From NCBI RefSeq assembly GCF_006345805.1, contig NC_043014.1, positions 21,948,001-22,012,000 of the forward strand: a DNA stretch of 64,000 bases, given 5' to 3'. The notes under the pieces were generated by a model. The model searched no databases, was not told the DNA's origin, and was given only the letters and a program-made list of their open reading frames with translations. Of this stretch, positions 6,659 to 64,000 are shown piece by piece. Made by a program: the position numbers and the translations under genes. The stretch's first letter is position 1. Every line of letters starts with the position of its first letter. Source of the stretch: Octopus sinensis. Lineage: Eukaryota.

Positions 6659-6693
<35 letters not shown>

Positions 6694-6816
6694 ACGGTGG
6701 GCTTTTTTTTAGTTACCAAAATCACTCAAACTTTGGTCGGTCCGAGGTTATAGAAGACACAAGGTGCCTGCAGTGGGACTAAACCCGGAACCATGTGATT
6801 GAGAAGCAGGCTTCTT
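6490..6816 (-). mobile_element. SINE interrupted by the ORF1-only element (head remainder at 8287-8330)
   Basis: SINE body resumes across the insertion: minus strand GCTGTATGGTAAGAAGCTTGCTTCC|…|AAGAAGCCTGCTTCTCAATCACATGGTTCCGGGTTTAGTCCC. Confidence 0.75.
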
Positions 6817-9362: not shown

Positions 9363-12300
9363 CAATTATTATTGGAGTGCGTCTGTATAGTGCAGGTTTC
9401 TATTGACTGTTATAATTATTTGTGAGATAGTCTTCGTTCGAAAACTATCGTGTGTTTTTTCCTGTGGGGAAACATTAATTGCTGGCAAGATGCCGAAAAG
9501 TGTAACTTCGTCTGACGAAGAGTCGTCAACCGACAGGGAGGCAAAAAAGATTGAAAGTTTAATATTTGGCGCTGTTTCGGATTCTTCTTAAAGTGAATTT
9601 CCCCAACCATCAACGTGCACTGTTGCAAAGAGGAATATTGACGTGAAAAGCCTTCAAACAGAAGAAAATAGACAAAAAAGAAGTGTTGCGTCGGCGGCTG
9701 GAGGTAGAACCCGCCAGCTGTCGACAAACAAAAATGACTTGATAACGTACAAAGATATAACAATCGAAGACGGTGTTGTGAAAGAACTATTAATATTAGA
9801 AAAAAGAAAAACAATTATTTTTAAATCTTACTGTCTAAAAGGAAAAAAATTGATCGAGTGAGCGAAGAGAAAGTTGATAAGTGCTTGAAACCCATCTGGC
9901 AGGATATCACATACCTAGCCAGAGGGAAGAAGTTTGGTACTATCGAAATACAACTAAAAGATATAGAAACTGCACAAATGCACTCAGTTAAATCTTTAGA
10001 AACGGAGGACGTCAAAGATATGTATACCAAGGGTCCCACCCCAAGTCGACCCTATGTGGTTGATGGCGGCAGTCCTGGCAAAAAAAGAAGTTAATATAAC
10101 ACTCCTTCAGGGTACTGTCACAGAAAAAGCTTACTGGACTGGTCAAACGGTTCACCTCCTAATACAAGCAGAAAAGTCAATTTTAGAACAGTTACAGGAG
10201 AAAATAGAAATTGGGGAGGAATTCCTTTACGTATTCGTCGAGGGGCATAAGCACCGATGTTTCCAGTGTGGTCAGCTGGGCCATATAAAAAAAACACTGT
10301 AGAGACGGCGAGGAAGAATCCGATGGTGAGGAAGAGGAGGAGGAGAGAGAGAGAAACAGAAGAAAAGAAAGCAACTAACAACAAGAGAAAAATGGAAAGT
10401 TCAAATCAACAAAAACAGGTCGAACTAAGAAAAAAAAAACTGCGAAAAGAGACAAACCAGAAATAGTAAGGAAGGAAGCAGAAGACAGAGGGATAGTTGC
10501 ATTATACAGCAAAAATGAAGATTTAATGAGAGAAATAAAAGCAAAAAACATCAGCCACTAGGATTGCAGAACTTTCTGATAAATATAAGAACTACGAGTT
10601 CTACGAAATGGATAAAAAGACTCATAATGTTATAAAACCTATAGAAAGTCGGTGTCGATGATGAGATTGGATTTTAATCAATCCATTTTTAAAGACCTGC
10701 CACCTCCGACCCTATGTCAAGAAAAGGTGGAGAGTCCCTCTCCACAGGACACCCAGGATTAAATATGTAAGTAATGTCTATTCACATTGGTTGTGTAAAT
10801 GTTCGTGGCCTGATGTCTAGCTGGAAGCAAGGACGCTTTCTAAATGACATCAGGTCAAGAAAATTGGATGTGATTGCTGCAACGGAAACCTGGGTGAAGG
10901 GGCCAAGAGATCTGCTCCCCCCTCCTGAACGGCTATGAGAAATATGTTTCTCTGAGTCGGGCGGGAGGTGGGGGGTAGGGTGTCGGTCATACTAAAAAGA
11001 AACTGGGTAGCCGAGAAAAAGTTTTCTTTTTCTGATCCAGAAGGCAGGCTGGTCGTTCTCGACCTGATATTCAGTTGTGGCAAGATAATCAGGTTGGTTG
11101 CAATTTATGCACCCAACGTTATGGGCCCGCAAAATGAATATTTTAGTGACCTGAGCAAGTTCCTGGCCACGTCGCATTCGCTAGTACTGCTAGGAGACTT
11201 TAACACAATCTCTGACGCACACACAGATTGTGTTGGCTCGAACATGAATAGAAAATGTGACTCTGGCTTACGGGATCTGCTAAGTCACTTTCAGCTGGCA
11301 GATCCATATAGGTTGGAATGCCTGAACACTCCACAGTGGACGTGGTCAAATATTTTCCAGAAAATATATAGATAGGGTTTTAATTAGAAAAACAGATAAG
11401 TCCATAGCTAACTGCCCAGAGTTTTATCTAGTTAGCTACAGTGACCACAAACCGACAGTAGATAAGTTGCATAGACAAGGATCTGGCTACTGGAAACTCA
11501 ATAGTCCCTTTTGGCGATTGAAGAATACAGAAAGCGGACCGAGATGTTAATACAGAGGGTATTGACAGGTACCACCATTAATAACAAATGGTAATACGCC
11601 CTAAAAAGAGCCATAAAATATGAGTTTATTAGGTTTAGCATAAGTTTAGCTAAGAAGGGACGTAGAATAAGAGATGGTCTAGTTAAGGAACTAGAAGAAG
11701 CCTGGAGGACTGGTAATGCGGACCAAGTGAAGGTGAAGAGACTGGAGTTGAACCAGCATCTTGAAGCCCAACACATGGGAAGTATTGCCAGAGCTTAGTT
11801 ACGTTCGATGGGAAGTGAAGGAATCAAGGCCGCTGGATGGGCCCGAGTGCTGGAAGCTCGACAAGGAAATAGTTCCACTATTCGGTCTTTGACAAATCAA
11901 AATGGTGTCTTGGTAAACGAACCCAAGGAAATGTGTGAGGTCTTTCGGGAGTACTTCGCCCAGCTGTTCGGGGTGATGGCAGTCCTGATGGTGGGGGAAT
12001 CCTCGAGGACTTTCTTGCCGGGCTGCCGTGCCTCTCGGGGTCGGATGCGGAGTCTTGCAAAGGGCCGATTACGCCTGTGGAGGTGATGGAGGCTATGACC
12101 GACTGTAAAGCGGGTAAGTCGCCGGGACTTGATGGTCTTTCGTACGAGTTGTATATATGTATGCCAGACTTGTTCGGGCACCTACTGGCTGAGGTGTACG
12201 CTAACTGGCAACAGAATGGGTTTATCTCCAGATCTGTGCGCCGGGGAGTAGTGACTTTGGTCAGAAAGAACTCGGACAAGGGGGACGTTTTAGATAACTT

Positions 12301-14166
12301 CAGGCCCATCACTCATCCCAGGCAGAACCATTCAGGATAATCTCCACCTTATTCGCTATACCATAGAGTGGGTTGGTGATAAATCTGGTAAAGGTGAAAC
12401 ATTGGTACATTTGGACCAGTCTAAAGCTTTTGATAGGGTTGACCATCGATACCTGGCGACTGTGCTTGCACGGTTCGGCCTAGGCCTTGGCTTCTTCAGG
12501 TGGTTTATCGCTTTGTATCACAACATTGACTCGATAGTTCGAGTGAACGGTTTCCTTTCGAAGCCGTTCTGCATCAGGCGCTCGGTTCGTCAAGGATGTC
12601 CGCGCTCACCACTTTTGTATGAGGTGGATCTTGAACCCCTGCTGCGAAGGTTGAGTGGCATCCCGAGAGAACCAGGAATTTGTTACAGCTTACGTGGACG
12701 ATATCACTATCAGCGTAACCATAGTAGCATGCCTACGTGAAGTGGGTAAGGCTATTGAGTTTTACAAGACGGTGGCAGGAGCAAAGATTAACCGGGAAAA
12801 GTCGGTCGGCTTGCAGCTCGGCACCTGGGTTAGCAAGTCGATACTTTCAGACAGCGTTGTTGGGCGCTAGACAGAGGGACCGGTTAACTTGCTGGGTGTC
12901 TGGTTTGGACCAGGCCTCCAGACAGAGAAGAACTGGACGGAGGTTTCGAGGTGGTCTTGGCGGTTGCTATCCCTAAAAGGGATGGCGGAGGTGGCCAATG
13001 TGTTTATCGCATCGGTCATTACCTACCACCCTTTCCGGATTCGTAGTTGATCAAGTTGGAGAGACAGCTCTTTCGCTTTTTGTGGAAGGGCAGACCGCCA
13101 CTTGTGAAACGCTCTGTCTGTTGTCAAAAGCCGTTAAAGGGAGATTTAGGGATGCCTTGGTTAATGATGTGCAGGCATGCTTTGAGGTTGAGGCATCTCT
13201 AGATTTTCCTGGATGGTGAACGGATGTGGTCTCCGCTGGCCAGACAAATGTTCCCTGAGTTCAAAAGTTTTTGCGAACAGGAAGCCTGGTGTTTTCGTAG
13301 ACCGAGGTCGAGTGAATGGTATAAAGAGTGCCCACCTGCTATTCCGGCGCTCGGGCAACGCCAGCGGTGGGGGCTCTACACGAATTTTATATAGTGGGTT
13401 GGTAGAGTCTGGGGGCAACTCTAGGACTCTGGTATATTCACCTGGAAAGCCTGTTCCATCGTACATTCGGGTTGAGAACGTTGGACAACTTCTAAAGGTC
13501 CTTGACTTGGCAATGTTACAGACGTGCCTTGCCCGTTTGGGATAAGCTCGCAAGACATGGTAACCTGTCCAAGATGCCGGGGAGACAGGGAAACCGTCCC
13601 TCACGCTATTGTCCAGTGTCCGGAGATATCTGAAATGTGGGTTTATGCTGAACACTTGTTGTCCGGCGAAAGAAGAGTACGGCTGTCCACTGAGTCAATT
13701 ATAAAAATTGACCCACCGGAAGTTTTAACAAACGAAGGTAAGAATTGCTTTCTCACGGTTGTAGCAATAGCGAAAGAGGCACTATGGAAGACTAGGATAA
13801 AAGGGATTAAGACAGATAACTGTATCTCCGACCACGATTTACAATCATTTTTTACTTTTCAGTTGAAAAGGAAGGTATGGCTGGAGAAGAGGTGTCTGTT
13901 GGAGAGTATTTTCAAAAAGAGATGGAAGCATGTTGCACAAGAGTTGTGCGTGCAAAGAACCGTGTGAATAGGCTATAAAAGAACAAAAAAAGGTACCAGC
14001 GATAGATCGGAGCTTGTGTTCTCTCTGTATTGTTAATTTCATTCAATTTCCTTATATTTTATATAATTTTTATATTCATATTTTAAGTAAAATCATAAGC
14101 ATTACTGATCCCTATCAATTGCTTTGTCCATTTCTGTGTTTGGTCCCCTATGGGCAATAAAGAAAT
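9363..14166 (+). mobile_element. Near full-length decayed Tx1-clade (L1 superfamily) LINE
   Basis: ORF1 fragments with CCHC (CFQCGQLGHIKK); ORF2 fragments with APE endonuclease (IGCVNVRGL, VLLGDFN), RT (KSPGLDGL, LDQSKAFDRVDH, RQGCPRSP, YVDD) and C-terminal CPRC...ETVPHAIVQC; many stops and frameshifts; 3' CCCCTATGGGCAATAAAGAAAT. Confidence 0.9.
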
Positions 14167-27007: not shown

Positions 27008-27600
27008 GTTAGAGAGAGACACCAACAAGAGAAATGAAACCAATACTTGGTATGATAACAAAAAATTTCACTGTGTAATGTTTGTTGACGCCACATCTAA
27101 GAACGAATTGTGTAAGGCATTCAAGAAAATCCTGCACACAACTGGCCTTAAGATCAATGTTGTAGAAAAGACAGGTAGGTCTATCAAATCTGTATTGTGT
27201 AGATCATATCCATTTGATAGATTCACATGTCAAAATAATTGTGTGGTGTTCTACAAACCCACATGTGAACTGCAAAACCAAGAGCACTGTATACCAAATT
27301 AAGTGACAAGAAGGAGCTTGCGCGACTAACCGAGAGTCATACATAGGTGAGACTTCTAGGAGTATCAATGATAGATTCAAAGAACACCTGGACAACTACA
27401 TTGAAAGGAAACCAAACTCTATCTTCTATCAGCATGCTGTAGACTGCCACAAGGGCTCCTTAGGGAGACTTAAATTAAACATTTTATCAACACATCCCAC
27501 TGATGCAATGCTGAGACAGGTCACTGAAGCTCTTTGTATACAGGAATACAAACCCACTCTCAACCGAAAACCCGAATGGGGTAACATCTAGATTCCACTC
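27008..27600 (+). mobile_element. Penelope-like element 3' fragment (GIY-YIG endonuclease)
   Basis: With one frameshift and one stop: NCKTKSTVYQIK*...SYIGETSRSINDRFKEHL...RQVTEALCIQEYKPTLNRKPEWG; begins directly after (TA)n. Confidence 0.75.
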
Positions 27601-27655: not shown

Positions 27656-27982
27656 GCATACTTGTCGAAATGCTTGGTACTAAAATGCATATATGCAGTT
27701 ATATATAACCGTACGAGCGTACATTGTTTGATATGTATGTACGAATGTGTAGATGTATATGTGTGTATACGTGTGTGTATGTGTTGTGTGTTGTGTATGT
27801 TAGTGTATAAGTATGTACATGCATGCACATATGAGTATGTGTAAATATATATATATGTATTATATATGCATGCATGTAAAAATAAAAAAAAGGATAAATA
27901 GAATAAAATAAAACAAATTTGAATTTTAACTGTTGTCCCTGAAAAAGAGTGTCATATATATGTATATGTATGTGTGTGTATG

Positions 27983-28036
<54 letters not shown>

Positions 28037-28489
28037 CACACACACATACATATACATATATATATATACATATATATGACACTCTTTGTGTCATATATAT
28101 GCATATATATATGTATATGTATGTGTGTGTATGTATAAATATATATATATATATTTATACATACACACACACATACATATACATATATATATATACATAT
28201 ATATGACATTCTTTTCAGGGACAACGGTTAAAATTCAAATTTGTTTTATTTTATTCTATTTATCCTTTTTTAAAATTTTTACATGCATGCATATATAATA
28301 CATATATATATATTTACACATACTCATATGTGCATTCATGTACATACTTATACACTAACATACACAACACACAACACACAACACATACACACACGTATAC
28401 ACACATATACATCTACACATTCGTACATACATATCAAACAATGTACGCTCGTACGGTTATATATAACTGCATATATGCATGCAAGTATG
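27656..28489. repeat. Nested fold-back (inverted repeat) centred on (TA)n
   Basis: 27685-27960 is the reverse complement of ~28200-28480, including the non-simple sequence GATAAATAGAATAAAATAAAACAAATTTGAATTTTAACTGTTGTCCCTGAAAA; the interior is itself palindromic. Confidence 0.75.
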
Positions 28490-28961: not shown

Positions 28962-31900
28962 TTATGGCTGCCCCCTTGTTATCGAGTATGGCCATTACAC
29001 GAAGCTTAACTGTTACTGGTGCTGTGATCGAATGTGACATTTTAGCACAACTAAAGATCTACAATGCCTTGTACAGAATTGGCAGCTAAAACCTTTACTG
29101 GTAATAGCCGACTGTAGTTGTAACTGGGCTTCATGTACCTTTGCATGTCGTTTAAGTCCTCCTGCCGAATTACACTCTCTTTCACATGCCCGACAGATAT
29201 GATTAGTATGGTGTGTTACACCACTACCAGTGGCCAGGTTGTCACTCATCTGTCTCGTTTTATGACTACCAAGATGACTCATGAGTCCAGCTTTACTGAG
29301 GCAGGATCTTGCACAGATATTGCATGTTAGAATCAAAGGAAGACCCTTCCCTTCTGGAAGTGTAACAGCAATGCCCTTCGTGACATCCCTCCTTACTTTC
29401 TCATGTGCAACTCGAGATTTCTCAAACGTGGCTGTCCCCTCATGCACAATCCTTCTCCACCTGCTACGATCAATAGCTATGCCTTCCCATGTCTCAGGAG
29501 AGATGCAAGCATCTCTTAAGGAAGCCTTCAGCAAGTCCTTATACCTCTTTTTGGTTTATGTGGAGATCGTTCTCCTTTAGCTAACTCTCCATAAAAGAGT
29601 TGTTTTGGCATCCTTGAATCCTTCATTCTGACCAGATGACCATCTGAGTCTTTGCTTTAACACAAGAGCTTCTATACTTACACATCGAGAGCCTTCGGGT
29701 ATTTCAAGATCACTGATGCGGTACTTCCACTTAATGCTATAGATCCGTCTGAGGCACATCTGATGGAAACGTTCCAGTTGTTTAAGGTGGTATCGATATG
29801 TGACCCACGTCTCGCAGGCATAGAGAAGAGAAGGGAGCACACATGCCTTGTACACCTTTATCTTTGTCTTTCTGCATATGTCTCGCCGACTCCAGAGGCA
29901 CTTTTCTAGCCTTCCGAAAGCAACACTTGCTTTCCTAATTCTATATGGAATTTCATCATCCACATTGCCATATCTATTAATAGTGCTTCCCAGGTAGACA
30001 AACTGATCGACTACATCAAGTCGTTTACCATTCACATAGATATTTGGTACACTATACTGCTTACCAGGGGCAGGTTGATGCATGACAACAGTTTTCTTGA
30101 GATTGACTGTCAATCCTAAGGCAGTGCAAGCATCAGAGAATGCATTCAAAATGTGTTGCATATCAATCTCTGTGTGTGCTACTAGCTCACAATCATCAGC
30201 ATACAAAAGGTCTCTTATGATAAAGGTAAATATCTTTGTTTTTGCAGCAAGGCGCCTGATATTAAATATGCTGCCAGAGGTTCGATAATGGACGTAAACA
30301 CCGTGTCTGCAGTTTCTGAATGCAATACAGAACACCATCGCGAAATATATGGAAAATAGGGTCGGTGCCACAATATGCCCCTGTTTCACTCCATTTTGTA
30401 TTGAAATGGGCTCCGACATCTTCCCTCTAACATTCACCCTACCATTCATGTCTTCATGAAAAGACCTAACCAAAGCAAGGAACTTTTCAGGACACCCAAA
30501 TTTCTGGAGGACTTTCCACAATGCTTTTCTATTGACGGTATCAAAGGCTTTTGTCAGATCGACAAACACCTGATACAAATCCAGACCCTGTTCCACACAC
30601 TTTTCCTGAAGCTGTCTAGCTGAAAAGATCAGTGCCACGTCCCACACGAAAGCCAGATTGACTTTCTGGAAGAACACAATCTGCAATATATTTCAGCAGA
30701 CGATCCAGAAATATCCTGCATAAAATCTTTCCTACAGCAGACAGCAATGATACTCCCCTATAATTACCACAATCATTCCTGTTGCCCTTTCCCTTATACA
30801 GGACCACCATTACTGCATCTCTCCAGTCCTCAGGTACAGATTCACTAGTCCATACCTTACCAAACAAAGAGTGAAGTTTCTGCAGAATTTTCTCACCACC
30901 ATGCTGTAACAACTCCGCATGTATGCCATCCATACCCGGAGACTTCCCATTATTCAACTTTGAGACAGCCATTGCTACTTCTTCCAACTTTGGTGGTTCT
31001 GCGAATGCTGCCTTCACAGGCAATCCAGGGATGAGATTGAGAACATCCTCACTAACTACAGACTGATGATTCAAAAGTTCATCAAAGTGTTCTTGCCACC
31101 TTCACAGAATTCCTTGTGAATCACGAAGAAGTTCTTTACCATCCCTGCTTCGAATTGGTGTCATCAGGGAAGACGTCGGTCCATAAACATCTCACAAAAG
31201 ACCATACAACAGCTTTGTGTTATTGGAATTTGATGCCGCTTGTATCTCATCAGCCTTCTTACTCCACCACGTATCCCTCATCTGAGAGAGCTGTTGCCTC
31301 ACACGTGATTTTACGTCCTTGAGTTCCCTATGCAACACTTCCCTTTCCTGTGACTTTGCTGACAAAAACGTGACAAATTATGTCTTTTATCAGCCAATTA
31401 ATCATCTATATGTTCATCATCTTCTTTGAACCAATCTTGATGCTTTCTTTGTATCAATCCCAGAACTTTCTTGCCTATATCATAAACTGACTTTTTAAGA
31501 GTCGGCCAATCCTCCCCAATATCTGTAGCATTCATTTCCTCTCGTAAAGTTCTCTTCACACTATTATACCTAAGACGATCAACATTCAGTCTTTTAGGCA
31601 GGGTCATCCCTGCAGCTTGGATTTTATGTTTTGTGACTAATTTCACTTTTGCACGTACTAGGCGGTGGTCAGTCCAACACTCAGCTCCACGAAGAACATG
31701 AACACACTGCACATCCTGTCTGTCACGCACCCTAACTAGGATGTAATCCAGAATATGCCATTCTTTAGATGCAGGGTGAATCCATGTAATCTTAAGCTTA
31801 TTCTTTTGTTGAAACATGGTATTGGTAACACACAGACTCAGCTCCTCACACATCTGCAGCAAAAGCATGCCATTACCATTACACTTCCCCACCCCATGCT

Positions 31901-32530
31901 TTCCAATTACAGTCCATGTGTTAAAATCCCTACCCACTCTAGCATTAAAGTCACCCAGTACGATTATTTTGTCTGCCCGAGGGATATTTATTATAATGCC
32001 CTTCAAAGCATGGTAGAAAGAAAGTTTTTCGTCATCAGTATAGCACATAAGTTGGAGCATACATACTCACCAAGGTCATATAATTTCCTTTAGCCAAAGG
32101 AATTCTCATGGACATAAGACGCTCGTTAATTCCGATTAGGAATTCTTCCAACTTGTCCACAAGAGTAGCCATAACAGCAAATGCCACTCCAGCTTCTCCT
32201 CTAAGCTCTTCATCTCTCCCTTTCCAAAAGAATGTATATTTTCCACAAGATTCTGTAAGATGACCATCTCCAGGTAATCTCGTCTCAGATAAAGCAACGA
32301 TGTTAAGATCATAGCGTTGAAGCTCCTTCGCAACAAGCGCAGTCCTTCTTTCAGGACATTCAGAGGACTTGTGGTCAAGTAGTGTCCGTACATTCCAACA
32401 GCCAATATTCATTCTTTTCTTTGGTTCTGTCGCAGTAGCATGATGACGGCCGGGTTTAGACTGTGATGCTCTGGAGCCCCTGCCGGGCCAGACTCTTTCA
32501 GCCGATGTGGTTCAAGAGTCCTTACTGCCA
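28962..32530 (-). mobile_element. Near full-length RTE-clade LINE with frameshifts
   Basis: MNIGCWNVRTLLD...RRTALVAKEL...VALSETR, IIVLGDFNARVG, KSPGMDGI, FVDLTKAFDTVNR, GVKQG, LLYADD, plus three C-terminal C2H2 fingers. Confidence 0.9.
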
Positions 32531-33503
32531 TTTATTTTTATACTGTTTTGGTACATCATTGATTTTTGCTTTTTAAGGCTACAGCCAGCCACTCAGTTGA
32601 GACTCACGGCACTATCAACAATCATGAATTAGTTAATCACTTTAATCAATCCAATGTAGTTATCGTGCAATACCTGTGCAAAAAGATTTTTTTAAAGTGA
32701 GGAAAGGCTGTGCACTGAGTCAGTCCCACTCACTAAGCAACAGCAGCCATAATCCGAAAAGAAGAACAAGTCAACATCATCGGTAACCACTGAGCTGCAG
32801 GTTTTATGTTGGAGTTATCCCAGTTACCTGAGTTACCTTCTCCTAGAAGGATGCCCTAACAAAGGCTAAGAGTCCTTCACTCCCAATGGTTTAACCGCGC
32901 GATCGGGTATTCAGTCCGATTATTTCTATGTCCCCGCGCATGATACAGCCTTAAGCCTTAAGAAAAAAAAAAAGAAAAAAACATTTATTGGATGGCCGCT
33001 GACTCTCAAGAGTTCCTCCGCTCTTTGACGGGTTTTGTTTTTCACCCTCCTCACCAAGCAAGCATGGTGGGGTTACCGGTTTAGTCGCCGACGACCCGAC
33101 CATGCAACAGGTTGTTCTGGGTTACATGTTACCAGTAGCACTCGAAAGTGACATACATACATACGCACATACATGCATACATACATACATACATACATAC
33201 ATACATACATACATACATACATACATACATACATACATACATACACACACACACGCATACATACGTACATATATATCATGAACTAACTGTTACTTTCTCA
33301 GATGCAGCACGAAGCTTTGTCAATGAGCAGGTCGCGGTCTCAAAGCGACGAAAATATTTTGCCAAATTAAATTTAAATGTTGAAGTGAATCTAACGGCTT
33401 TGTGTTTCTTAAATGGCTTATAAACACCTTCCACGCTGCAATTGTTTTCGTTCCAGCACACGATCTCAGATCAAGTCACTCGCTATGCAAGTACATCTCC
33501 GTA

Positions 33504-33574
<71 letters not shown>

Positions 33575-33693
33575 ACAATCAAGGAACGGCCATAATAGGC
33601 CATTCACCCACTAGAAATAACAGCCAAAGCTTCAACCGCAAATAAAAATCAATTCCGTAAACCAGGAGAAAATTAAAAAACATTTACCCTGTA

Positions 33694-33800
33694 ATTTCTT
33701 ATACGATGCACCGTTTCATCTACTGTTTAATGGTAAACTAACCTGATTAAATTAAATCAAGCCAATCTTCCATAGGCCCTTAGATTCATCAGTAAGAAAT
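33694..33800 (-). ncRNA. Type I hammerhead ribozyme (first of six minus-strand copies, one per direct unit)
   Basis: Reverse complement of the 36595-36701 motif; predicted cleavage 3' of the minus-strand A at 33702. Confidence 0.8.
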
Positions 33801-36594
33801 AGCCAAGTCGGAACAGATATTTTCACGAGGCATTTCCGACCCTGCCAAGGCAATATCTGACCTAAAATTTTCAAATCATCGCACTCGCGCCAAATTTATC
33901 GGCAGCAAATAAATATAAGCCGTCGATTCCAGTACGGAATTAACCAGAAAATTCATAATTAATCAATATAGGGTGGCAAAAAATTTTGTAGAATTTTTTT
34001 TGCCACCAGCGGCCTAGTGGGAAAAAATTAAATAGTCATAGACCATTTTTAAGTTCAACATCAACAATCAAGGAACGGCCATAATAGGCCATTCACCCAC
34101 TAGAAATAACAGCCAAGCTTCAACCGCAAATAAAAATCAATTCCGTAAACCAGGAGAAAATTAAAAAACATTTACCCTGTAATTTCTTATACGATGCACC
34201 GTTTCATCTACTGTTAATGGTAAACTAACCTGATTAAATTAAATCAAGCCAATCTTCCATAGGCCCTTAGATTCATCAGTAAGAAATAGCCAAGTCGGAA
34301 CAGATATTTTCACGAGGCATTTCCGACCCTGCCAAGGCAATATCTGACCTAAAATTTTCAAATCATCGCACTCGCGCCAAATTTATCGGCAGCAAATAAA
34401 TATAAGCCGTCGATTCCATTACGGAATTAACCAGAAAATTCATAATTAATCAATATAGGGTGGCAAAAAATTTTGTAGAATTTTTTTTGCCACCAGCGGC
34501 CTAGTGGGAAAAAATTAAATAGTCATAGACCATTTTTAAGTTCAACATCAACAATCAAGGAACGGCCATAATAGGCCATTCACCCACTAGAAATAACAGC
34601 CAAAGCTTCAACCGCAAATAAAAATCAATTCCGTAAACCAGGAGAAAATTAAAAAGCATTTACCCTGTAATTTCTTATACGATGCACCGTTTCATCTACT
34701 GTTTAATGGTAAACTAACCTGATTAAATTAAATCAAGCCAATCTTCCATAGGCCCTTAGATTCATCAGTAAGAAATAGCCAAGTCGGAACAGATATTTTC
34801 ACGAGGCATTTCCGACCCTGCCAAGGCAATATCTGACCTAAAATTTTCAAATCATCGCACTCGCGCCAAATTTATCGGCAGCAAATAAATATAAGCCGTC
34901 GATTCCATTACGGAATTAACCAGAAAATTCATAATTAATCAATATAGGGTGGCAAAAAATTTTGTAGAATTTTTTTTGCCACCAGCGGCCTAGTGGGAAA
35001 AAATTAAATAGTCATAGACCATTTTTAAGTTCAACATCAACAATCAAGGAAGGGCCATAATAGGCCATTCACCCACTAGAAATAACAGCCAAAGCTTCAA
35101 CCGCAAATAAAAATCAATTCCGTAAACCAGGAGAAAATTAAAAAACATTTACCCTGTAATTTCTTATACGATGCACCGTTTCATCTACTGTTAATGGTAA
35201 ACTAACCTGATTAAATTAAATAAAGCCAATCTTCCATAGGCCCTTAGATTCATCAGTAAGAAATAGCCAAGTCGGAACAGATATTTTCACGAGGCATTTC
35301 CGACCCTGCCAAGGCAATATCTGACCTAAAATTTTCAAATCATCGCACTCGCGCCAAATTTATCGGCAGCAAATAAATATAAGCCGTCGATTCCATTACG
35401 GAATTAACCAGAAAATTCATAATTAATCAATATAGGGTGGCAAAAAATTTTGTAGAATTTTTTTTGCCACCAGCGGCCTAGTGGGAAAAAATTAAATAGT
35501 CATAGACCATTTTTAAGTTCAACATCAACAATCAAGGAACGGCCATAATAGGCCATTCACCCACTAGAAATAACAGCCAAAGCTTCAACCGCAAATAAAA
35601 ATCAATTCCGTAAACCAGGAGAAAATTAAAAAAATTTACCCTGTAATTTCTTATACGATGCACCGTTTCATCTACTGTTAATGGTAAACTAACCTGATTA
35701 AATTAAACCAAGCCAATCTCCCTTAGATTCATCAGTAAGAAATAGCCAAGTCGGAACAGATATTTTCACGAGGCATTTCCGACCCTGCCAAGGCAATATC
35801 TGACCTAAAATTTTCAAATCATCGCACTCGCGCCAAATTTATCGGCAGCAAATAAATATAAGCCGTCGATTCCATTACGGAATTAACCAGAAAATTCATA
35901 ATTAATCAATATAGGGTGGCAAAAAATTTTGTAGAATTTTTTTTGCCACCAGCGGCCTAGTGGGAAAAAATTAAATAGTCATAGACCATTTTTAAGTTCA
36001 ACATCAACAATCAAGGAACGGCCATAATAGGCCATTCACCCACTAGAAATAACAGCCAAAGCTTCAACCGCAAATAAAAATCAATTCCGTAAACCAGGAG
36101 AAAATTAAAAAACATTTACCCTGTAATTTCTTATACGATGCACCGTTTCATCTACTGTTTAATGGTAAACTAACCTGATTAAATTAAACCAAGCCAATCT
36201 CCCTTAGATTCATCAGTAAGAAATAGCCAAGTCGGAACAGATATTTTCACGAGGCATTTCCGACCCTGCGTTTGAAGCTTTGGCTGTTATTTCTAGTGGG
36301 TGAATGGCCTATTATGGCCGTTCCTTGATTGTTGATGTTGAACTTAAAAATGGTCTATGACTATTTAATTTTTTCCCACTAGGCCGCTGGTGGCAAAAAA
36401 ATTCTACAAAATTTTTTGCCACCCTATATTGATTAATTATGAATTTTCTGGTTAATTCCGTAATGGAATCGACGGCTTATATTTATTTGCTGCCGATAAA
36501 TTTGGCGCGAGTGCGATGATTTGAAAATTTTAGGTCAGATATTGCCTTGGCAGGGTCGGAAATGCCTCGTGAAAATATCTGTTCCGACTTGGCT

Positions 36595-36701
36595 ATTTCT
36601 TACTGATGAATCTAAGGGCCTATGGAAGATTGGCTTGATTTAATTTAATCAGGTTAGTTTACCATTAAACAGTAGATGAAACGGTGCATCGTATAAGAAA
36701 T
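36595..36701 (+). ncRNA. Type I hammerhead ribozyme in the inverted block
   Basis: Stem I ATTTCTTA/TAAGAAAT; core CTGATGA (36603-36609); stem II base ATCTA/TAGAT enclosing 58 nt; GAA-A; stem III ACGG/TCGT with TGCA loop; GUA cleavage triplet ending at 36693. Confidence 0.85.
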
Positions 36702-36930
36702 TACAGGGTAAATGTTTTTTAATTTTCTCCTGGTTTACGGAATTGATTTTTATTTGCGGTTGAAGCTTTGGCTGTTATTTCTAGTGGGTGAATGGCCTAT
36801 TATGGCCGTTCCTTGATTGTTGATGTTGAACTTAAAAATGGTCTATGACTATTTAATTTTTTCCCACTAGGCCGCTGGTGGCAAAAAAATTCTACAAAAT
36901 TTTTTGCCACCCTATATTGATTAATTATAA

Positions 36931-36967
<37 letters not shown>

Positions 36968-37009
36968 CATATATATATATGTATATATATACATATACAT
37001 ATATATCTC

Positions 37010-37205
37010 TTTTACTCTTTTACTCTTTTATTTGTTTTAGTCATTTGACTGCGACCATGCTGGAGCACCGCCTTTAGTCGAGCAAATCGACCCCGGGACT
37101 TATTCTTTGTAAGCCCAGTACTTATTCTATCGGTCTCTTTTGACGGGGACGTAAACACACCAGCATCGGTTGTCAAGCAATGTTAGGGGGACAAACACAG
37201 ACACA

Positions 37206-37267
<62 letters not shown>

Positions 37268-37436
37268 CATATATACGACAGGCTTCTTTCAGTTTCCGTC
37301 TACCAAATCCACTCATAAGGCATCGATCGGCCCGGGTCTATAGCAGAAGACACTTACCCAAGATGCCACGCAGTGGGACTGAACCCGGAACCACGTGGTT
37401 GGTTAGCAAGCTACATACCACACAACCACTCCTGCG

Positions 37437-37440
<4 letters not shown>
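37010..37440 (-). mobile_element. tRNA-derived SINE (two-part type)
   Basis: Minus-strand head AGGCGCAGGAGTGGTTGTGTGGTATGTAGCTTGCTAACCAACCACGTGGTTCCGGGTTCAGTCCC; homologous to the hosts of the ORF1-only elements. Confidence 0.75.
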
Positions 37441-37474
<34 letters not shown>

Positions 37475-37481
<7 letters not shown>

Positions 37482-38489
37482 AAAAAATTTTTGGATTTTT
37501 CCTTGTGTAGCCTGTCCTGTACTTGTCGTTAAATTTTTGTTTTTCCCGTTTCTACGTCTTGTTGTGGCGTCCTGTACTTACGTTTATTTATTTATATATG
37601 CATGTATATATACATGTAGATGTAGGTACGTACATATATGTTTGTATGTATGCATATATTTTTAATTATCACATTATTGTCTGACAGCGCCCCGCGTCAG
37701 GTTCGTTTCGATTTGTCGGTTCGTTCCACTTCTTGTCTCCATTCAATTTTTATATAAATATTTAAGACGCGCAATTCTCTCCCTTTGCTTTACCCTCTCT
37801 ACTCTCGCTCCCTCCCACTCTTCCCCTTTTCTCTCTCTTAGCCGCGTGTCCCCTCCTCCTTCCTTCTTTCTCACTCCCAGCTTAAAAACTTTCTCTCTTT
37901 CGCACGCTGCCTCTGCTACTGAAAAGTCTTGCTTCCCTACACTGCCACACAACATCTTTCGCCTAGCCAAAAAAAGGCCTTTTTCGTCTGTTTGGTTTTT
38001 CTCATTTGTCCTCGTTTGTTTGATTTCCCGTATTGTATTCCCTTTTTATTTCTCATCTTGTATTTTTTTGTACATGTATTTTTATCTTGTATTTTATTGC
38101 GTAGTTTTATTGTTACATCCTGTTTGTGTTCTTACCCGTTTTACCCCGCTGCTTGGAATTTTATTTTAATTCTCTCGCAGGAAGGCGAGTTAACGAGTGT
38201 CCTGTCTTGCCTTCGAAACACGCCTGAGTTAAGTAGCGACAGCTGATGACGGTAGATTTTTCCTTGTGTAGCTTGTCCTGTACTTGTTTTCTTGTTGTAA
38301 AAAAATTTTGGATTTTTCCTTGTGTAGCCTGTCCTGTACTTGTCGTTAAATTTTTGTTTTTCCCGTTTCTACGTCTTGTTGTGGCGTCCTGTACTTACGT
38401 ATATTTATTTATATATGCATGTATATATACATGTAGATGTAGGTACGTACATATATGTTTGTATGTATGCATATATTTTTAATTATCAC

Positions 38490-57789: not shown

Positions 57790-59180
<1,391 letters not shown>

Positions 59181-62100
59181 CTGTCTATGGACGTGCTGTC
59201 ACTTCGGCTCCGAAGGTAATCGTTTATTTTGACTATTTATAGCCCATATTTTGTGTACATTTTTGTAAATAAGGTGTGTAAGGCACCCAACTTTCGTTTG
59301 AGTGCTTTTCCAAGGGAGGAATTCGCCCCTAGGGGCAGTTTCAACCCTATTTAATTTTTGTAATTTCTTTCTCGACATTTTGAAAATGTCAAGAAATTGT
59401 ATTGTAGAACGATGGTCGCGTTCCTTTATCGACCAGCTTTCTCCTAGACTGGAAACGCTAGGAGAAAAAAAGAATTTATGCGCGCAAAGTAAAATCATCA
59501 ATGACTTTGCAATGAACGCTACAACTACTTGTAGTAACAGCCCTGTCACCAACACCACCACTACCAAGAACAACATAGAGACTACTACTGTTACCACCAC
59601 CGCCTTCACCACCACCACCACCACCACCACCGCCGCCACCTCATCCACTACCTCAACTACCAACAACAACAACAATAACAATGACAACAAAAATAAAAAT
59701 TGCGCCACCATTTCGACATCTGCTGCCACGGCTGTCTCTTCTGCCACTGACACCACCACCAACAACAAAAACAACAATAACAACAACAACAATTCCGTTC
59801 AGACCTGTTTTACTCCAACAACAAGAACTGAAGTGAATAAACAAAAGACCACCAAACAAATTGACAAAAGCTGCTCGAATACAGGGATAAATTATGAAAA
59901 TAATTTTCCACCCCCCCCCCTTCCTACTTGCACAATCAAACCAAATACACCAATTTTACCAACTGCAGCCAACAACAACATCACCACCAGCAACAACAAT
60001 AACAAAACAACAACAAATTTCGCCGAGGCGATTAAAGAAAAAACGACAACAGTATATTTTACTGCTCAACAAATAAAAGACACGAACATTACAATAACGG
60101 AAGTAGATGGTATAGTAAAAATAAACGTACCAGAAGAAATATTAGAAGATGAAAAAAAAAGAACAATTATTTATAAAATAATTAATAAGAAAACAAAAAG
60201 TCCAGAGAAGGCTAACACAAGCAAAATAGAAAAATGCTTGAAACCCATCTGGAACTACAAAGACTATGTGACCTGGTGGAACAAGTTCGCACACAAACAA
60301 GTGGTCTTCCACACTGAAGAGTTAGCAAGACGTTTCTCAACGCTAACTCTTCATTCAGATGAACTGACATTAATACCAAGCTATCGTGGACAGAAAGTGA
60401 CTAAGATCACTTTAAACAATGTCCCATAGCTAATAATCTATGGCTAATAATCTATGGCTAATAATCTATGGCTAGTAAAGGCCTTATGTGTGAAAATGAA
60501 AGATTTCACAATTTTAGAAACCACGGTCACGGAGCACAAAAACTGGGTGGGAAAAAAAGTAGAATTTCTACTACATATAAACCAAGAAGACACAAAGAAA
60601 ATACCCACCCAGATATGTGTATCAGAAGACCACAAGTTGTATGTGGTCGTCGATGGCAGAAGACCACGTTGCTACATATGCGGCAGTGAGAAACACCTAA
60701 AAAAAGACTGCAAATCTGCCGCAAGAAAACAACAGCAACAACAACAGCAGCCGGAAAAAACAAATAAACCAGGTTTACTACCCACACCACGTTTTGCACG
60801 AACAGGACTAATCACAGAAAACCAACAAAAAACAAACCTCACCACCAACCAACAACCACACCAACTGCACCAAGAACAGAAGCAACATCACCAACAACAA
60901 CAACCAAGAATAAACCAACTCCCAAACCAAGGACATCTGCCAAAAAGACACTCATCGAAAATGAAGAAACAATTACTACTCCAAATCCCCACAAAATTGA
61001 CACCCCAAACAACACAACAATACCTACAATCACTCAAACACAAAATACCCACACCCCACCTCCAAAACCGCATACACCACAACCAAACGCTCACCAACCA
61101 ACACCAACAACAAAATCAACACAGTCTACAATAGACCCCAATATTTTCCCTCTTCCAAGCTCTGATTCTTCTGATTTGTCATTAGACGAAGAAGACACAG
61201 AAGATTGGCAAATAGCCACAGGGGGGAGAAGAAAAAGGGGAAAAAAAGAAAAGAAAAGATAACAAACAAAGCAGGAAGATACACCACTCCCGAAACAAAA
61301 ACATCCACAGAAAACAAACACATCAACACAAACACACCATCATCAAACCCCCCAACAATGTTGACAGCCATAAACACAAACAACCACGACCTAATGGAAC
61401 ACATTAGGTCAAACACCAACATAACCGAAAACGACATAAAAACAAGTAACCACCCACGCACAACACCACCACAACACATTAAAATAATACACGTAACACA
61501 GAACACATACAGCACCCTGAAATCTCTTTACCCTGATGCAGTAGGGAGATTTCAAAAGTATATACAAAAGCCTCATAGAAGACCGTGAGGTGAAAAACAA
61601 AGGACTTTCGAACAACAAGTAACCTTTTCTCTCTCTCTTTCCTTTTTTGCACTTTCTTTTCGTGTGTAAAACACAATTTTATCGGAACATGCTCAGAATA
61701 GGCAGTATAAATGTACGTGGCTTGGGGTTGCCTCGGAAACAAGGCTACCTGTTAAATGACATCAAGTCACTAAATCTGAATATCATAGCCATCAGTGAGA
61801 CCAGACTCCACAGCTTGCGGGCACTCCAGCACATTTTCGGTACACATTTCAACATTTATTTTTCTCCGTGTCTACCGAGAATGGGCGGAGGTGGCACCGC
61901 GGTGCTTATCCGGAAGAGTCTGGATCTCAAAGTAGGGCAAATTTCCTAGACCCGGAGGGTAGGCTGGTCGTTTTGGATGTCGATGGCAGCAATGAGTGTG
62001 CTTTTCGACTGATAGCAGTTTATGCTCCGTCCTTAACAGGCCGACCAGATTTCTTTCGACGTCTAGAGTCTTTCATGGGAACGTCTCGTCCTTTACTTTT

Positions 62101-64000
62101 AGTGGGGGATTGGAATGCCACCCTGGACACGCATCTAGACTACGTGGGCAGAGATAGCAATAGAAGGGGATGCAAATGCCTCAAAGACCTGCTCAGACGT
62201 TTCTAACTGTCTGACAGGTACCGACTGGACCACCCGAATGTGCCAATGTGGACATGGAGTAACCGCATCGGGTCGTCCAGATCATACTTAGATAGAGTAT
62301 TCTGTAGGACAATAGATAAAAATAGTGTAGGTTGTCCACAATTTCATATAGTCAGTTACACAGATCACAAGTTTGTGACTTGTACACTTGACTTACATAA
62401 GACACATAGGCAGGGTCCTGGTTACTGGAAACTGAACGCGTCTTTTACAGCACGACAGGTTTACAGCACATTAGTTAAGAGAGCTTTGACGGGTACCATC
62501 ATCAACAACAGATGGTGGTATGCCCTAAAAAAAGCAATTAAAGCAGAATCAGTCAGATACAGTAGAGCCCTAGCATTAGACCGAAATAGAATAGAGGGAG
62601 AATTAGTTAAGGTTTTAGAAGAGGCACTTAGAACTGGCATCGCGTCCAACGTGCTGGCGGCGAGATTGGCCCTCGACCAACACCTCAACGCCAAACACGA
62701 GGGATGCGTTGTCAGAGCTAGGATGCGTGCTCTGAGGAACGAAGGAGTTGGAGCCGCCCAAGAGGCCCGAGTGGTGGAGACGCAACGAGGCAACAGAGCC
62801 ACCATCAAGTCTCTTATAGATGAACAGGGGCGCGAATTGCTCGAGCCTAAAAGGATGTGTGGGGCTTTTCAACAACACTTCACCCAACTGTTGGGACAAG
62901 TGGTGGGTCAGAACGCAGAGTGGACTTTAGTGCCTACCTGCATGCCTTGCCACGACTCTCAGCAAGAGAGGTGGAGTCTTGTGAAAGGCCTATCACAGCT
63001 GCGGACGTACAGGATGCGATGGTAGGCTGCGCGAGAGACAAGTCACCAGGCTTGGATGGTCTGCCCTACGAACTTTATTTTCATATGCCAGACTTGTTTG
63101 GAGGCGTCTTGGCAGCTGTCTACTGCAACTGGCAGCAAAACAGGAGTATTCCTGCTTTTGTAAAGCGAGGAGCAGTGGCACTGATTAAGAAAGACCCAAA
63201 CAAGGGGGACGTCATAGATAATTTCAGGCCCATCACTCTGCTCAACGCAGATTTGAAAACTGGAACGTATACTCTTCCGCTTCTTGTGGAAGGGAAACGT
63301 TCCGATGGTTAGGCGATCCATTTGCTGTCAACACCCGCAAAATGGAGGGCTGGGCATGCCGTGGTTGATGATGCGCAGACATGCGCTGAGACTGCGACAT
63401 CTCCGGCGCTTCATAGACAACGGTGAACAGGTGTGGTCGCCTTTTGTGCGGCGCGCTTTCCCGCAGCTCGTCTCCTTGGACGAACTACAGTCATGGATCA
63501 AGCAGAGACCGAGGCTAGGCGAATGGCACCGCGAGTGTCGCGTTGCTCTCAAGCAACTCTGCCGTCCGGGATCGAACTTGTGCGACTCCATCACAACAAA
63601 GGCATTCTATAGAGGATTAGAGGAGGGGAGGTGCGACGACGAACTCGGGCAGAGTCTGGTCGTCGACGAGGAACACCTGACCCACCAGTTCAGGACAACT
63701 TTCGGGCCGGGACCTATGAACAATCACCAAAGATCCCTGGCCTGGCAGTGCTATCGAGAAGCATTACCTGTTCGGGATAAGCTCTACAGACACGGTTCCA
63801 GACACACTGGACCGACTTGCCCGAGATGCGGTCAGAGCGAGGAAACCGTTCTGCACGCACTCGTGCAATGTCCAACCATTTCAGACCTGTGGGCTTATGC
63901 CGAACAGCTGCTGTCACGTGTGGGACGAATCCGCCTATCGGTCGAGTCTATCGTGAGAATTGCTCCGCCCCTTCCCTCAACCGGGAAGGCAAGGCAGTTT
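59181..64000 (+). mobile_element. Tx1-clade LINE with ORF1 and a disrupted ORF2 lacking the RT core; runs off the window
   Basis: Starts at the end of (TATC)n; ORF1 59302-61134 (CYICGSEKHLKKDC), split by a 14-bp triplication at 60429-60470; ORF2 from ~61689 (IGSINVRGL, GDWN); NFRPITLLNADLK is followed almost directly by FRFLWKG. Confidence 0.9.

What the first reader, a model, noticed from the sequence alone, without database searches (positions are those of the whole stretch)
33572..36928. Young tandem array of ~488-bp units, each with an intact type I hammerhead ribozyme: candidate cephalopod retrozyme producing self-cleaved monomers or circRNA
Seen in sequence: each unit has the full core in the right order (8-bp stem I, CUGAUGA, stem II closed by AUCUA/UAGAU, GAAA, stem III ACGG/UCGU with palindromic UGCA loop, GUA cleavage site). 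Six copies read on the minus strand and one on the plus strand. The units have no ORF, are almost identical, and lie inside (TA)n. The rest of the unit is highly self-complementary: CTAGTGGG/CCCACTAG, GGTGGCAAAAAA/TTTTTTGCCACC, AATTCCGTAA/TTACGGAATT, and GAATGGCC/GGCCGTTC, whose U-G wobble works only on the hammerhead strand. Established: tandem type I hammerhead repeats (retrozymes, newt satellite 2, schistosome Sm-alpha) give unit-length and circular RNAs and are linked to Penelope-like elements. Inference: this is a recently active non-autonomous retroelement mobilised by a PLE; three PLE GIY-YIG relics lie in this window. I cannot tell whether this family has been described.
Basis: partly seen in the sequence, partly recalled or inferred. 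Interest (0 to 1): 0.92.

Follow-up and report, generated by a model that had tools for sequence, protein, structure and literature searches.

The report
Hammerhead-ribozyme retrozyme array in a TA microsatellite
A 3.4-kb block of near-identical 488-bp non-coding repeats, each carrying a complete self-cleaving hammerhead ribozyme motif, is a new family of a known class of animal mobile element (non-LTR retrozymes), and its layout matches how Penelope-like retrotransposons insert.

Summary
Positions 33571-36932 hold a 488-bp tandem repeat: five full and two partial units in one orientation, then 1.35 units inverted. Units are 98-99.4% identical, and the block lies between (AT)35 and (TA)40. All seven units carry the same type I hammerhead: 8-bp helix I, CUGAUGA, 5-bp helix II, GAAA, helix III ACGG/UCGU with a UGCA loop, and a GUA cleavage site. 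A much weaker descriptor found nothing in 300 shuffled windows.

Caveats: no Rfam hammerhead model reaches threshold. The motif has A10.1-U11.1 where G-C is typical, and a 49-58-nt extension of helix II. I confirmed one Penelope-like (PLE) GIY-YIG relic, not three. The cephalopod origin could not be verified, and no other copies were found in any collection.

New support for the retroelement reading: the two blocks lie head-to-head. Both are 5'-truncated and meet at a 3-nt microhomology. Their 3' ends fall at different unit positions, each abutting (TA)n. This is the published PLE insertion signature and fits twin-primed reverse transcription of a circular or multimeric RNA.

Verdict: a new family of a known kind, the metazoan non-LTR retrozyme. 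Cleavage, circles and mobility are inferred, not shown. Interest is moderate.

The parts
33504..33572 (.). (AT)35 microsatellite, left flank; it abuts the 3' end of the minus-orientation block
   Evidence: TRF; junction ...TTGAT|ATATAT shown on the hammerhead strand
33571..36269 (-). Main block. Reading 5'->3' on the minus strand: unit positions 346-488, then five full units (36133-35654, 35653-35167, 35166-34678, 34677-34190, 34189-33702), then unit positions 1-131
   Evidence: TRF period 488; BLAST register; unit boundaries taken at the predicted cleavage sites
36267..36269 (.). Head-to-head (5'-5') junction of the two blocks; the 3 nt TGC can be assigned to either block
   Evidence: Alignment of the junction with both unit continuations
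36267..36932 (+). Inverted, 5'-truncated block: unit positions 62-488, then 1 to about 236-240
   Evidence: BLAST; inverted-repeat arms; right junction ...TTAATTAT|AAATATAT
36926..37006 (.). (TA)40 microsatellite with CA interruptions, right flank; it abuts the 3' end of the plus-orientation block
   Evidence: TRF
36595..36701 (+). Hammerhead motif, plus copy, 107 nt: helix I 36595-36602 / 36694-36701, CUGAUGA at 36603-36609, predicted cut 3' of 36693
36126..36224 (-). Hammerhead motif, 99 nt; 8-nt deletion and A434G in the helix II extension; cut at 36134
35646..35743 (-). Hammerhead motif, 98 nt; same 8-nt deletion and A434G; cut at 35654
35159..35264 (-). Hammerhead motif, 106 nt; G433T in the helix II extension; cut at 35167
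34670..34776 (-). Hammerhead motif, 107 nt; cut at 34678
34182..34287 (-). Hammerhead motif, 106 nt; cut at 34190
33694..33800 (-). Hammerhead motif, 107 nt; cut at 33702
27283..27588 (+). Relic of the C-terminal GIY-YIG endonuclease of a PLE, 6 kb from the array; context only, not part of the array. It has an in-frame stop and no reverse-transcriptase part upstream
   Evidence: Regex and tblastn; Pfam GIY-YIG E=7e-4, below cutoff; 399 homologues, of which two long ones that I read (P0135, P0151) carry a YVDD reverse-transcriptase motif and a C-terminal endonuclease

Best explanation
This is one insertion of a non-autonomous, non-LTR retrozyme. The element is a 488-nt non-coding RNA whose genomic form is a head-to-tail array. 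Transcription through the array on the hammerhead strand (inferred) gives a multimer. Each unit folds a type I hammerhead whose helix I is formed by the two ends of the unit. Helix III is marginal as a hairpin, and its 12 nt are self-complementary, so two neighbouring ribozymes can pair into a dimer with a 12-bp helix III. Cleavage after GUA would release 488-nt monomers with 5'-OH and 2',3'-cyclic phosphate ends (inferred). A host tRNA-type ligase could close these into highly paired circles, as shown for coral, mussel and axolotl retrozymes. The locus itself looks like the product of one integration by the reverse transcriptase/GIY-YIG endonuclease of a PLE at a (TA)n target (inferred from architecture). 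Both sides of the break primed cDNA synthesis at AU dinucleotides of the template. One cDNA ran 5.5 units and the other 1.35 units, which needs a circular or multimeric template. The two 5' ends were then joined at a 3-nt microhomology.
For: The array, its near-identity and its TA flanks are shown. Seven identical catalytic cores in type I topology are shown, and chance is excluded. The hammerhead-constrained fold lies within about 2 kcal/mol of the minimum for five of six units folded. Helix III scores -0.2 kcal/mol as a hairpin and -17.5 kcal/mol as a 12-bp dimer. The unit has no ORF and 36% GC. The circular monomer folds at -136 kcal/mol (z = -4.3) with 61% of bases paired and 24 G-U pairs; the opposite strand gives -98 kcal/mol and 3 G-U pairs. 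The blocks are head-to-head and both 5'-truncated, at unit positions 346 and 62, with a TGC microhomology. Their 3' ends lie at different unit positions (about 131 and about 236-240), each next to (TA)n and neither at the cleavage site. Published PLE hallmarks are 5' truncation, partial tandems, an inverted 5'-truncated copy at the 5' end, (TA)n as a preferred target of Naiad-clade PLEs, and multicopy head-to-tail insertions of non-autonomous elements (PMC8557442). Retrozyme criteria and the proposed PLE partner are described in PMC7229834 and bioRxiv 10.64898/2026.07.22.740005 (consensus units 51-972 bp; 75% of families have at most seven repeat units). A canonical PLE endonuclease relic lies in the same window.
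Against: No Rfam hammerhead model reaches threshold. There is nothing at gathering score, nothing at E<=10 over 4.5 kb, and only a 12.4-bit Hammerhead_3 match on a 141-nt slice. The base pair closing helix II is A10.1-U11.1, whereas G10.1-C11.1 is described as highly conserved (PMC4209133). Helix I (8 bp) and helix II (5 bp plus a 49-58-nt extension) differ from the canonical 6/4-bp layout that supports loop-loop contacts, so activity could be low or absent. No second locus, transcript or relative was found. The unit shares no sequence with the local PLE relic or its flank. An 8-nt deletion plus A434G is shared by the two units nearest the centre, and a 1-nt deletion is shared by both plus-block units. 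A single monomeric circle as the only template does not predict this. The inverted junction could be an assembly error.
Confidence: 0.7

Rival explanations
1. It is an ordinary tandem (satellite-like) repeat that grows and shrinks by unequal crossing-over. Its hammerhead-like motif is a decayed or never-active relic, and the RNA, if any is made, is not processed.
For: No Rfam hammerhead model reaches threshold. The motif has A10.1-U11.1 and a very long helix II. Variants shared by adjacent units are what unequal exchange produces. With only seven near-identical copies, there is no power to show selection on the core: the chance that 12 variant events miss the 49 essential positions is 0.28.
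Against: Every invariant core position, all three helices and the type I connectivity are present, against a chance expectation of about zero. Helix III is a perfect 12-nt palindrome, as in ribozymes that act as dimers. DNA-level exchange does not explain two independent junctions with (TA)n at different unit positions together with a head-to-head junction.
Confidence: 0.15
2. The tandem array is real, but the inverted 666-bp block is an assembly artefact (a chimeric or fold-back read), so there is no twin-priming footprint.
For: PLE-type tandem/inverted structures are known to cause assembly problems (PMC8557442). No reads are available here.
Against: The inverted block has its own junction with the right-hand (TA)n at a unit position (about 236-240) that is not a terminus in the other block. 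It also carries a private 1-nt deletion in both of its units. A simple fold-back copy of the neighbouring block would not give either feature.
Confidence: 0.1
3. The array is the pseudo-LTR part of an autonomous PLE whose coding region was deleted or lies elsewhere, and not a separate non-autonomous family.
For: PLE pseudo-LTRs carry hammerheads and form partial tandems. Retrozymes are reported to be related to pseudo-LTRs.
Against: There are 5.5 + 1.35 units with no trace of a reverse-transcriptase or endonuclease ORF. The unit has no similarity to the PLE relic in the window. PLE hammerheads are described as mostly minimal, lacking helix III, whereas this one has a 4-bp helix III.
Confidence: 0.05

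Closest known systems
Metazoan non-LTR retrozymes (Cervera & de la Pena 2020, PMC7229834), in particular the 350-390-bp Mytilus galloprovincialis repeats
   Same: Head-to-tail repeats of a few hundred bp. One type I hammerhead per unit, on one strand only. No ORF, LTR, PBS or PPT. Low GC. A highly self-paired monomer. PLEs present in the same genome. The mussel hammerheads also lack the archetypal loop 1-loop 2 nucleotides.
   Different: The unit (488 bp) is above the 170-400-nt range reported there, but inside the 51-972-bp range of the 2026 survey. It has A10.1-U11.1, an 8-bp uninterrupted helix I and a 49-58-nt helix II extension. No expression or cleavage data exist.
Newt satellite 2 and axolotl retrozymes (330-350 bp)
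   Same: A weak helix III capped by a palindromic tetraloop, which predicts cleavage as a dimer in multimeric transcripts.
   Different: Those have a 1-2-bp helix III and the conserved loop-loop contacts. Here helix III has 4 bp, one of them G-U, and no recognisable loop 2. Copy number in the source genome is unknown.
Dolichopoda cave-cricket pDo500 satellite (PMC2837043)
   Same: A unit of about 500 bp with a hammerhead. Compensatory changes at positions 10.1/11.1 are reported there, so this pair is not absolutely fixed in nature.
   Different: An insect satellite described as large arrays. The two families were not compared by sequence here.
Penelope-like element insertions (Craig et al. 2021, PMC8557442) and PLE hammerheads (Cervera & de la Pena 2014, PMC4209133)
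   Same: 5' truncation, partial tandems, an inverted 5'-truncated copy joined at the 5' end and a (TA)n target (reported there as a preferred target of the Naiad clade). A larger than usual helix II is also typical of PLE hammerheads.
   Different: No reverse-transcriptase or endonuclease ORF. PLE hammerheads are mostly minimal (no helix III) and keep G10.1-C11.1. The 30-40-bp 'tail' often seen at PLE ends was not recognised here.
Rfam Hammerhead_1 (RF00163) and Hammerhead_3 (RF00008)
   Same: The CUGAUGA and GAAAC boxes are recognised by the Hammerhead_3 model, with a 56-nt insertion placed in helix II.
   Different: The score is 12.4 bits against a gathering score of 48.5, and Hammerhead_1 gives no match at all.

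Membership tests
Hammerhead ribozyme, type I | Invariant core C3-U4-G5-A6-N7-G8-A9, G12-A13-A14, A15.1-U16.1 and H17 (not G) | tested here: met
   CUGAUGA ... GAAA ... U-A| is identical in all seven copies
Hammerhead ribozyme, type I | Three helices around the core, with helix I open and helices II and III closed | tested here: met
   Helix I 8 bp, formed by the unit ends; helix II 5 bp plus an extension; helix III 4 bp plus a UGCA loop. 0 hits in 300 shuffled windows
Hammerhead ribozyme, type I | G10.1-C11.1 closing pair of helix II, described as highly conserved in canonical hammerheads (PMC4209133) | tested here: not met
   All seven copies have A10.1-U11.1
Hammerhead ribozyme, type I | Score at or above the Rfam gathering threshold (RF00163 or clan CL00010) | tested here: not met
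   No match at gathering score or at E<=10 over 4.5 kb. The best match is 12.4 bits to Hammerhead_3 on a 141-nt slice, against a gathering score of 48.5
Hammerhead ribozyme, type I | Site-specific Mg2+-dependent self-cleavage | not testable with these tools
   Needs in vitro transcription of monomer and dimer constructs
Metazoan non-LTR retrozyme | Short head-to-tail repeats, each with a type I hammerhead | tested here: met
   488-bp period and seven hammerheads. This is within the 51-972-bp range, and about seven units is typical
Metazoan non-LTR retrozyme | Non-coding: no ORF, and none of the LTR, PBS or PPT features of plant retrozymes | tested here: met
   The ORF part was tested: the longest stop-free stretch is 48 codons, and the unit translated in all frames has no homologue among 5.8 billion proteins. 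LTR, PBS and PPT were not searched for specifically; the array consists only of 488-bp unit copies
Metazoan non-LTR retrozyme | Low GC (<45-50%) and a highly self-paired monomer | tested here: met
   GC 36%; 61% of bases paired; z = -4.3 against dinucleotide shuffles
Metazoan non-LTR retrozyme | Expressed as unit-length linear and circular RNA | not testable with these tools
   No transcript data could be reached. The protein-based look-ups found nothing
Metazoan non-LTR retrozyme | Dispersed copies at many loci (evidence of mobility) | not testable with these tools
   There is one locus in the window. No eukaryotic genome collection is available. Scans of the metagenome, viral and prokaryote collections found nothing beyond six chance matches
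Metazoan non-LTR retrozyme | Co-occurrence with PLEs in the genome | tested here: met
   One PLE endonuclease relic at 27283-27588
PLE-type insertion architecture | 5' truncation, partial tandem, and an inverted 5'-truncated copy joined at the 5' end | tested here: met
   The blocks start at unit positions 346 and 62 and meet head-to-head at 36267-36269. Published description
PLE-type insertion architecture | Insertion into a microsatellite, often (TA)n | tested here: met
   (AT)35 and (TA)40 abut the two 3' ends directly
PLE-type insertion architecture | A 30-40-bp 'tail' extension at one end | tested here: inconclusive
   Both ends run straight into TA repeats, so no distinct tail can be recognised
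PLE-type insertion architecture | Sequence similarity between the non-autonomous unit and the 3' end or pseudo-LTR of an autonomous PLE of the same genome | tested here: inconclusive
   No similarity to the single, truncated PLE relic in the window. Full-length PLEs of this genome could not be obtained

The most novel reading that the evidence does not exclude
The locus could be a single-event footprint showing how animal retrozymes integrate. A PLE enzyme would nick a (TA)n tract. Both DNA ends would prime on AU dinucleotides of circular, or mixed, retrozyme RNAs. Rolling-circle reverse transcription would make the tandem units, and the two cDNAs would be joined head-to-head. In addition, its hammerhead (A10.1-U11.1, long variable helix II extension) could represent an active subclass that current covariance models miss. 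If so, retrozymes in this lineage, probably cephalopods, would be systematically under-annotated.
Probability: 0.3. Interest if true: 0.65.

Novelty: new member of a known kind. Interest (0 to 1): 0.45.

Why it matters
Retrozymes are the one known route to abundant circular RNA in animals that uses a ribozyme instead of back-splicing. Which enzyme mobilises them has been argued only from co-occurrence and from similarity to PLE pseudo-LTRs. This locus adds junction-level evidence from a single insertion: head-to-head 5'-truncated blocks, different internal 3' ends and a (TA)n target. That evidence points to PLE-type target-primed reverse transcription of a circular or multimeric template. The locus also shows a complete hammerhead core in a context that Rfam does not detect. 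This matters for annotation and gives a natural test case for how much the 10.1-11.1 pair and the length of helix II matter. In the paper library I searched, no publication describes a cephalopod retrozyme family; only a count of Rfam hammerhead hits in the giant squid genome is reported. If the host is a cephalopod, the family would be a new record for that lineage.

Tried and rejected
Rfam was run on the whole window at gathering score, on 33000-37500 at E<=10, and on 36580-36720 at E<=10. The only hammerhead match was a 12.4-bit Hammerhead_3 hit on the 141-nt slice; the other matches were microsatellite noise.

Searches for other copies all failed. Exact look-ups of the 34-aa and 40-aa ORFs in public assemblies found nothing. 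Exact 25-26-mers in the metagenome, viral and prokaryote genome collections found nothing. A gapped hammerhead pattern in metagenomes gave six hits, all lacking helices I and III, so they are chance matches. A pseudo-protein made of all stop-free frames of the unit found nothing among 5.8 billion proteins.

Host identification failed. The LINE reverse transcriptase has only 57-64% identity to anonymous ENA contigs, and its named hits at about 50% come from a crayfish, a tapeworm and a snail. A word-index search with the PLE relic found nothing. A full-text search for strings of the flanking SINE-like repeat found no paper.

Searches for further GIY-YIG relics with several regular expressions and tblastn gave only the one at 27283-27588. 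The candidate at 39226 is not supported by Pfam.

A search for a hammerhead in the 3' flank of the PLE relic found none. No ribozyme motif was found on the opposite strand of the unit, so a viroid-like replicon with ribozymes in both polarities was rejected. ARAGORN found no tRNA-like gene in the window.

A test for selection on the core from the seven copies has no power (P = 0.28).
Full report
**The array**

Tandem Repeats Finder reports a 488-bp period with 5.6 copies and 98% matches at 33571-36269. It lies between (AT)35 at 33504-33572 and a (TA)40 tract at 36926-37006. I defined the unit on the hammerhead strand as starting just after the predicted cleavage site. On that register the main block reads, on the minus strand, unit positions 346-488 (36269-36134). 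Five full units of 480-489 nt follow (36133-35654, 35653-35167, 35166-34678, 34677-34190, 34189-33702), and then unit positions 1-131 (33701-33571). A second block in the opposite orientation covers 36267-36932, which is unit positions 62-488 and then 1 to about 240. Identities to one reference unit are 97.9-99.4%. No part of the unit occurs elsewhere in the 64-kb window.

**The hammerhead motif**

All seven copies read AUUUCUUA-CUGAUGA-AUCUA-[49-58 nt]-UAGAU-GAAA-CGG-UGCA-UCG-U-A|UAAGAAAU.

- Every invariant core position is present: C3-A9, G12-A14, A15.1-U16.1 and H17 = A.
- Helix I is 8 perfect base pairs formed by the two ends of the unit. Helices II and III are closed by loops, so the topology is type I.
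- My own descriptor asked for much less than is observed (helix I >=5, II >=4, III >=3 bp, with up to 120 nt allowed in helix II). It finds exactly these seven sites in the window. It finds none in 300 dinucleotide shuffles of the window on both strands, and one in 20,000 shuffles of the unit. The motif is therefore not a chance match.
- A fold constrained to the hammerhead lies about 2 kcal/mol above the unconstrained minimum for five of the six units folded. The unconstrained fold instead pairs GAUG of the core with CAUC of helix III.

**What is unusual about the motif**

- Rfam gives no hammerhead match at gathering score on the whole window, and none at E<=10 on 33000-37500.
- On a 141-nt slice, the only match is Hammerhead_3 at 12.4 bits (E = 4.9, gathering score 48.5). 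It recognises the two core boxes and places a 56-nt insertion in helix II.
- Three features explain the failure and also cast doubt on activity. The first is the 49-58-nt extension of helix II, which folds as a long imperfect hairpin.
- The second is an A-U pair at 10.1-11.1, where G-C is described as highly conserved in canonical hammerheads (PMC4209133).
- The third is an 8-bp uninterrupted helix I and 5-bp helix II. The canonical layout is 6 bp and 4 bp, which positions the loop-loop contacts.
- Compensatory changes at 10.1/11.1 do occur in the cricket pDo500 hammerheads (PMC2837043). Mussel retrozyme hammerheads lack the archetypal loop contacts and still cleave, at about 0.1 per min (PMC7229834). 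These departures therefore lower the expectation of activity without removing it.

**Helix III points to dimeric action**

The 12 nt ACGGUGCAUCGU are self-complementary once G-U pairs are allowed. As a hairpin they score -0.2 kcal/mol, and as an intermolecular 12-bp duplex -17.5 kcal/mol. This is the property described for newt, axolotl, schistosome and PLE hammerheads. In those, the ribozymes cleave efficiently only when two tandem copies pair, so multimers are processed and monomers are spared.

**The rest of the unit**

- No stop-free stretch exceeds 48 codons in any frame of a tandem unit.
- GC content is 36%.
- The circular monomer folds at -136 kcal/mol on the hammerhead strand, with z = -4.3 against dinucleotide shuffles, 61% of bases paired and 24 G-U pairs. 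The opposite strand gives -98 kcal/mol, z = -4.0 to -4.9, 48% paired and 3 G-U pairs.
- The hammerhead strand is G+U-rich, and the z-scores of the two strands are similar. The strand asymmetry is therefore suggestive only.
- No ribozyme motif is seen on the opposite strand.

**Architecture of the insertion**

- The two blocks are head-to-head. Their 5' ends, in RNA sense, meet at 36267-36269, at unit position 346 for one block and 62 for the other. Three nucleotides (TGC) can be assigned to either block.
- Their 3' ends point outwards and each runs directly into the TA microsatellite. On the left the junction is ...UUGAU|AUAUAU at unit position about 131. On the right it is ...UUAAUUAU|AAAUAUAU at unit position about 236-240.
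- Neither 3' end is at the cleavage site (position 488/1), so the template was not a cleaved linear monomer.
- Both blocks exceed one unit, so the template was circular or multimeric.
- A fold-back duplication of the main block would not create a second, different junction with (TA)n.
- Two independent insertions would be expected to leave TA repeats between the blocks, and none are there.
- From my own knowledge, this geometry is also that of 'twin priming' as described for L1 inversions: both ends of the break prime cDNA synthesis and the two cDNAs are joined at microhomology.

**Variation among units**

About twelve variant events separate the copies.

- Six are private to single units.
- An 8-nt deletion (unit positions 415-422) together with A434G is shared by the two units nearest the centre.
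- A 1-nt deletion in an A run (position 190) is shared by both plus-block units and is absent from all five minus-block units that cover that position.
- Five of the twelve events fall in the 58-nt helix II extension (binomial P about 0.009; a post hoc test). None falls in the 49 positions of the core and closing helices, but chance alone would give that outcome 28% of the time.
- The shared variants do not fit one monomeric circle copied without error. They suggest more than one template RNA, or a heterogeneous multimer, or later unequal exchange. I cannot separate these possibilities.

**Context**

- The window is dense in transposon remains: a LINE with endonuclease, reverse transcriptase and C2H2 fingers at 29013-32412 on the minus strand, other LINE pieces, mariner-type transposase relics, and a SINE-like repeat present at least four times.
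- I found one PLE relic, not three. It lies at 27283-27588 on the plus strand and encodes VYQIK*...YIGETSRSINDRFKEH.... Pfam GIY-YIG matches at E = 7e-4, below its cutoff.
- An exhaustive HMMER search finds 399 homologues of the relic. Two long ones that I read (P0135, 681 aa; P0151, 1047 aa) have a YVDD reverse-transcriptase motif and this endonuclease at the C-terminus. That is the canonical PLE arrangement, although Pfam itself names no domain in them.
- The relic is 5'-truncated, has an in-frame stop, shares no sequence with the 488-bp unit, and has no hammerhead in its 3' flank.

**Host**

The tools do not reveal the organism. From memory, the SINE-like repeat beginning at 37040 resembles a very abundant octopus repeat. 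That is a lead, not a test, and a full-text search for its sequence found nothing. GC content of the window is 38.8%.

**Comparison with what is known**

The element meets every criterion of the metazoan non-LTR retrozyme class that can be tested from sequence:

- tandem units each with a type I hammerhead;
- no coding capacity;
- low GC;
- a highly paired monomer;
- PLEs in the same genome (PMC7229834).

Its size and copy number are ordinary for the class: consensus units range from 51 to 972 bp, and 75% of families have at most seven units per array (bioRxiv 10.64898/2026.07.22.740005). It does not meet the Rfam threshold or the G10.1-C11.1 rule. Expression, circularisation, cleavage and dispersal could not be tested.

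In the searchable library, no paper describes a cephalopod retrozyme family. The giant squid genome paper only counts 235 Rfam Hammerhead_1 hits.

**Verdict**

The retrozyme interpretation is the best-supported one, at about 0.7. It gains support from the PLE-like, twin-primed architecture inside (TA)n. It is weakened by the atypical periphery of the ribozyme and by the absence of any second copy or transcript. This is a new family of a known kind. Interest is moderate.

Noticed in passing
window 37040-37432 (+); also 55290-55027 (-), 18650-17800 (-), 6493-6812 (+): A SINE-like repeat of about 390 bp with an internal (CA)n/(TA)n tract starts immediately after the right-hand TA flank of the array. 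It occurs at least four times in the window at 71-84% identity. From memory it resembles a very abundant octopus repeat. ARAGORN sees no tRNA in it.
   Followed up: partly
window 27283-27588 (+): A 5'-truncated relic of a canonical PLE: the C-terminal GIY-YIG endonuclease, with an in-frame stop at 27304-27306. It has 399 homologues in the 50%-identity library. No hammerhead was found in its 3' flank.
   Followed up: yes
window 27678-27891 and 28267-28487: An inverted repeat with arms 96-97% complementary surrounds a TA/CA microsatellite core. It begins about 90 nt after the stop codon of the PLE relic. It could be a fold-back element or two convergent 3' ends in one microsatellite.
   Followed up: partly
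window 29013-32412 (-): A LINE with an AP-type endonuclease (31398-32060), a reverse transcriptase (29577-30686) and C-terminal C2H2 zinc fingers (29013-29534). It is split into several ORFs. The closest relatives are 57-64% identical and come from anonymous ENA contigs.
   Followed up: partly
window 57947-58855 (+) and 820-1352 (+): Mariner-type transposase relics. Pfam Transposase_1 matches the first at E = 4e-23.
   Followed up: partly
window 10956-13964 (+) and 59302-64000 (+): Further LINE fragments, read by eye as endonuclease and reverse-transcriptase pieces; Pfam RVT_1 matches 12294-12737 (E = 3e-11). The second region includes an ORF with a CCHC zinc knuckle (60454-61134) upstream of an endonuclease-like stretch.
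   Followed up: partly
window 36595-36701 and the six minus-strand hammerheads: Differences between units cluster in the helix II extension of the hammerhead: an 8-nt deletion, two substitutions and a variable A run. That is 5 of about 12 events in 12% of the unit (post hoc P about 0.009).
   Followed up: partly
window 35922-36905: Because the two blocks are inverted, a read-through transcript across the whole locus would contain several hundred base pairs of near-perfect double-stranded RNA. This could be a source of small silencing RNAs against the family.
   Followed up: no
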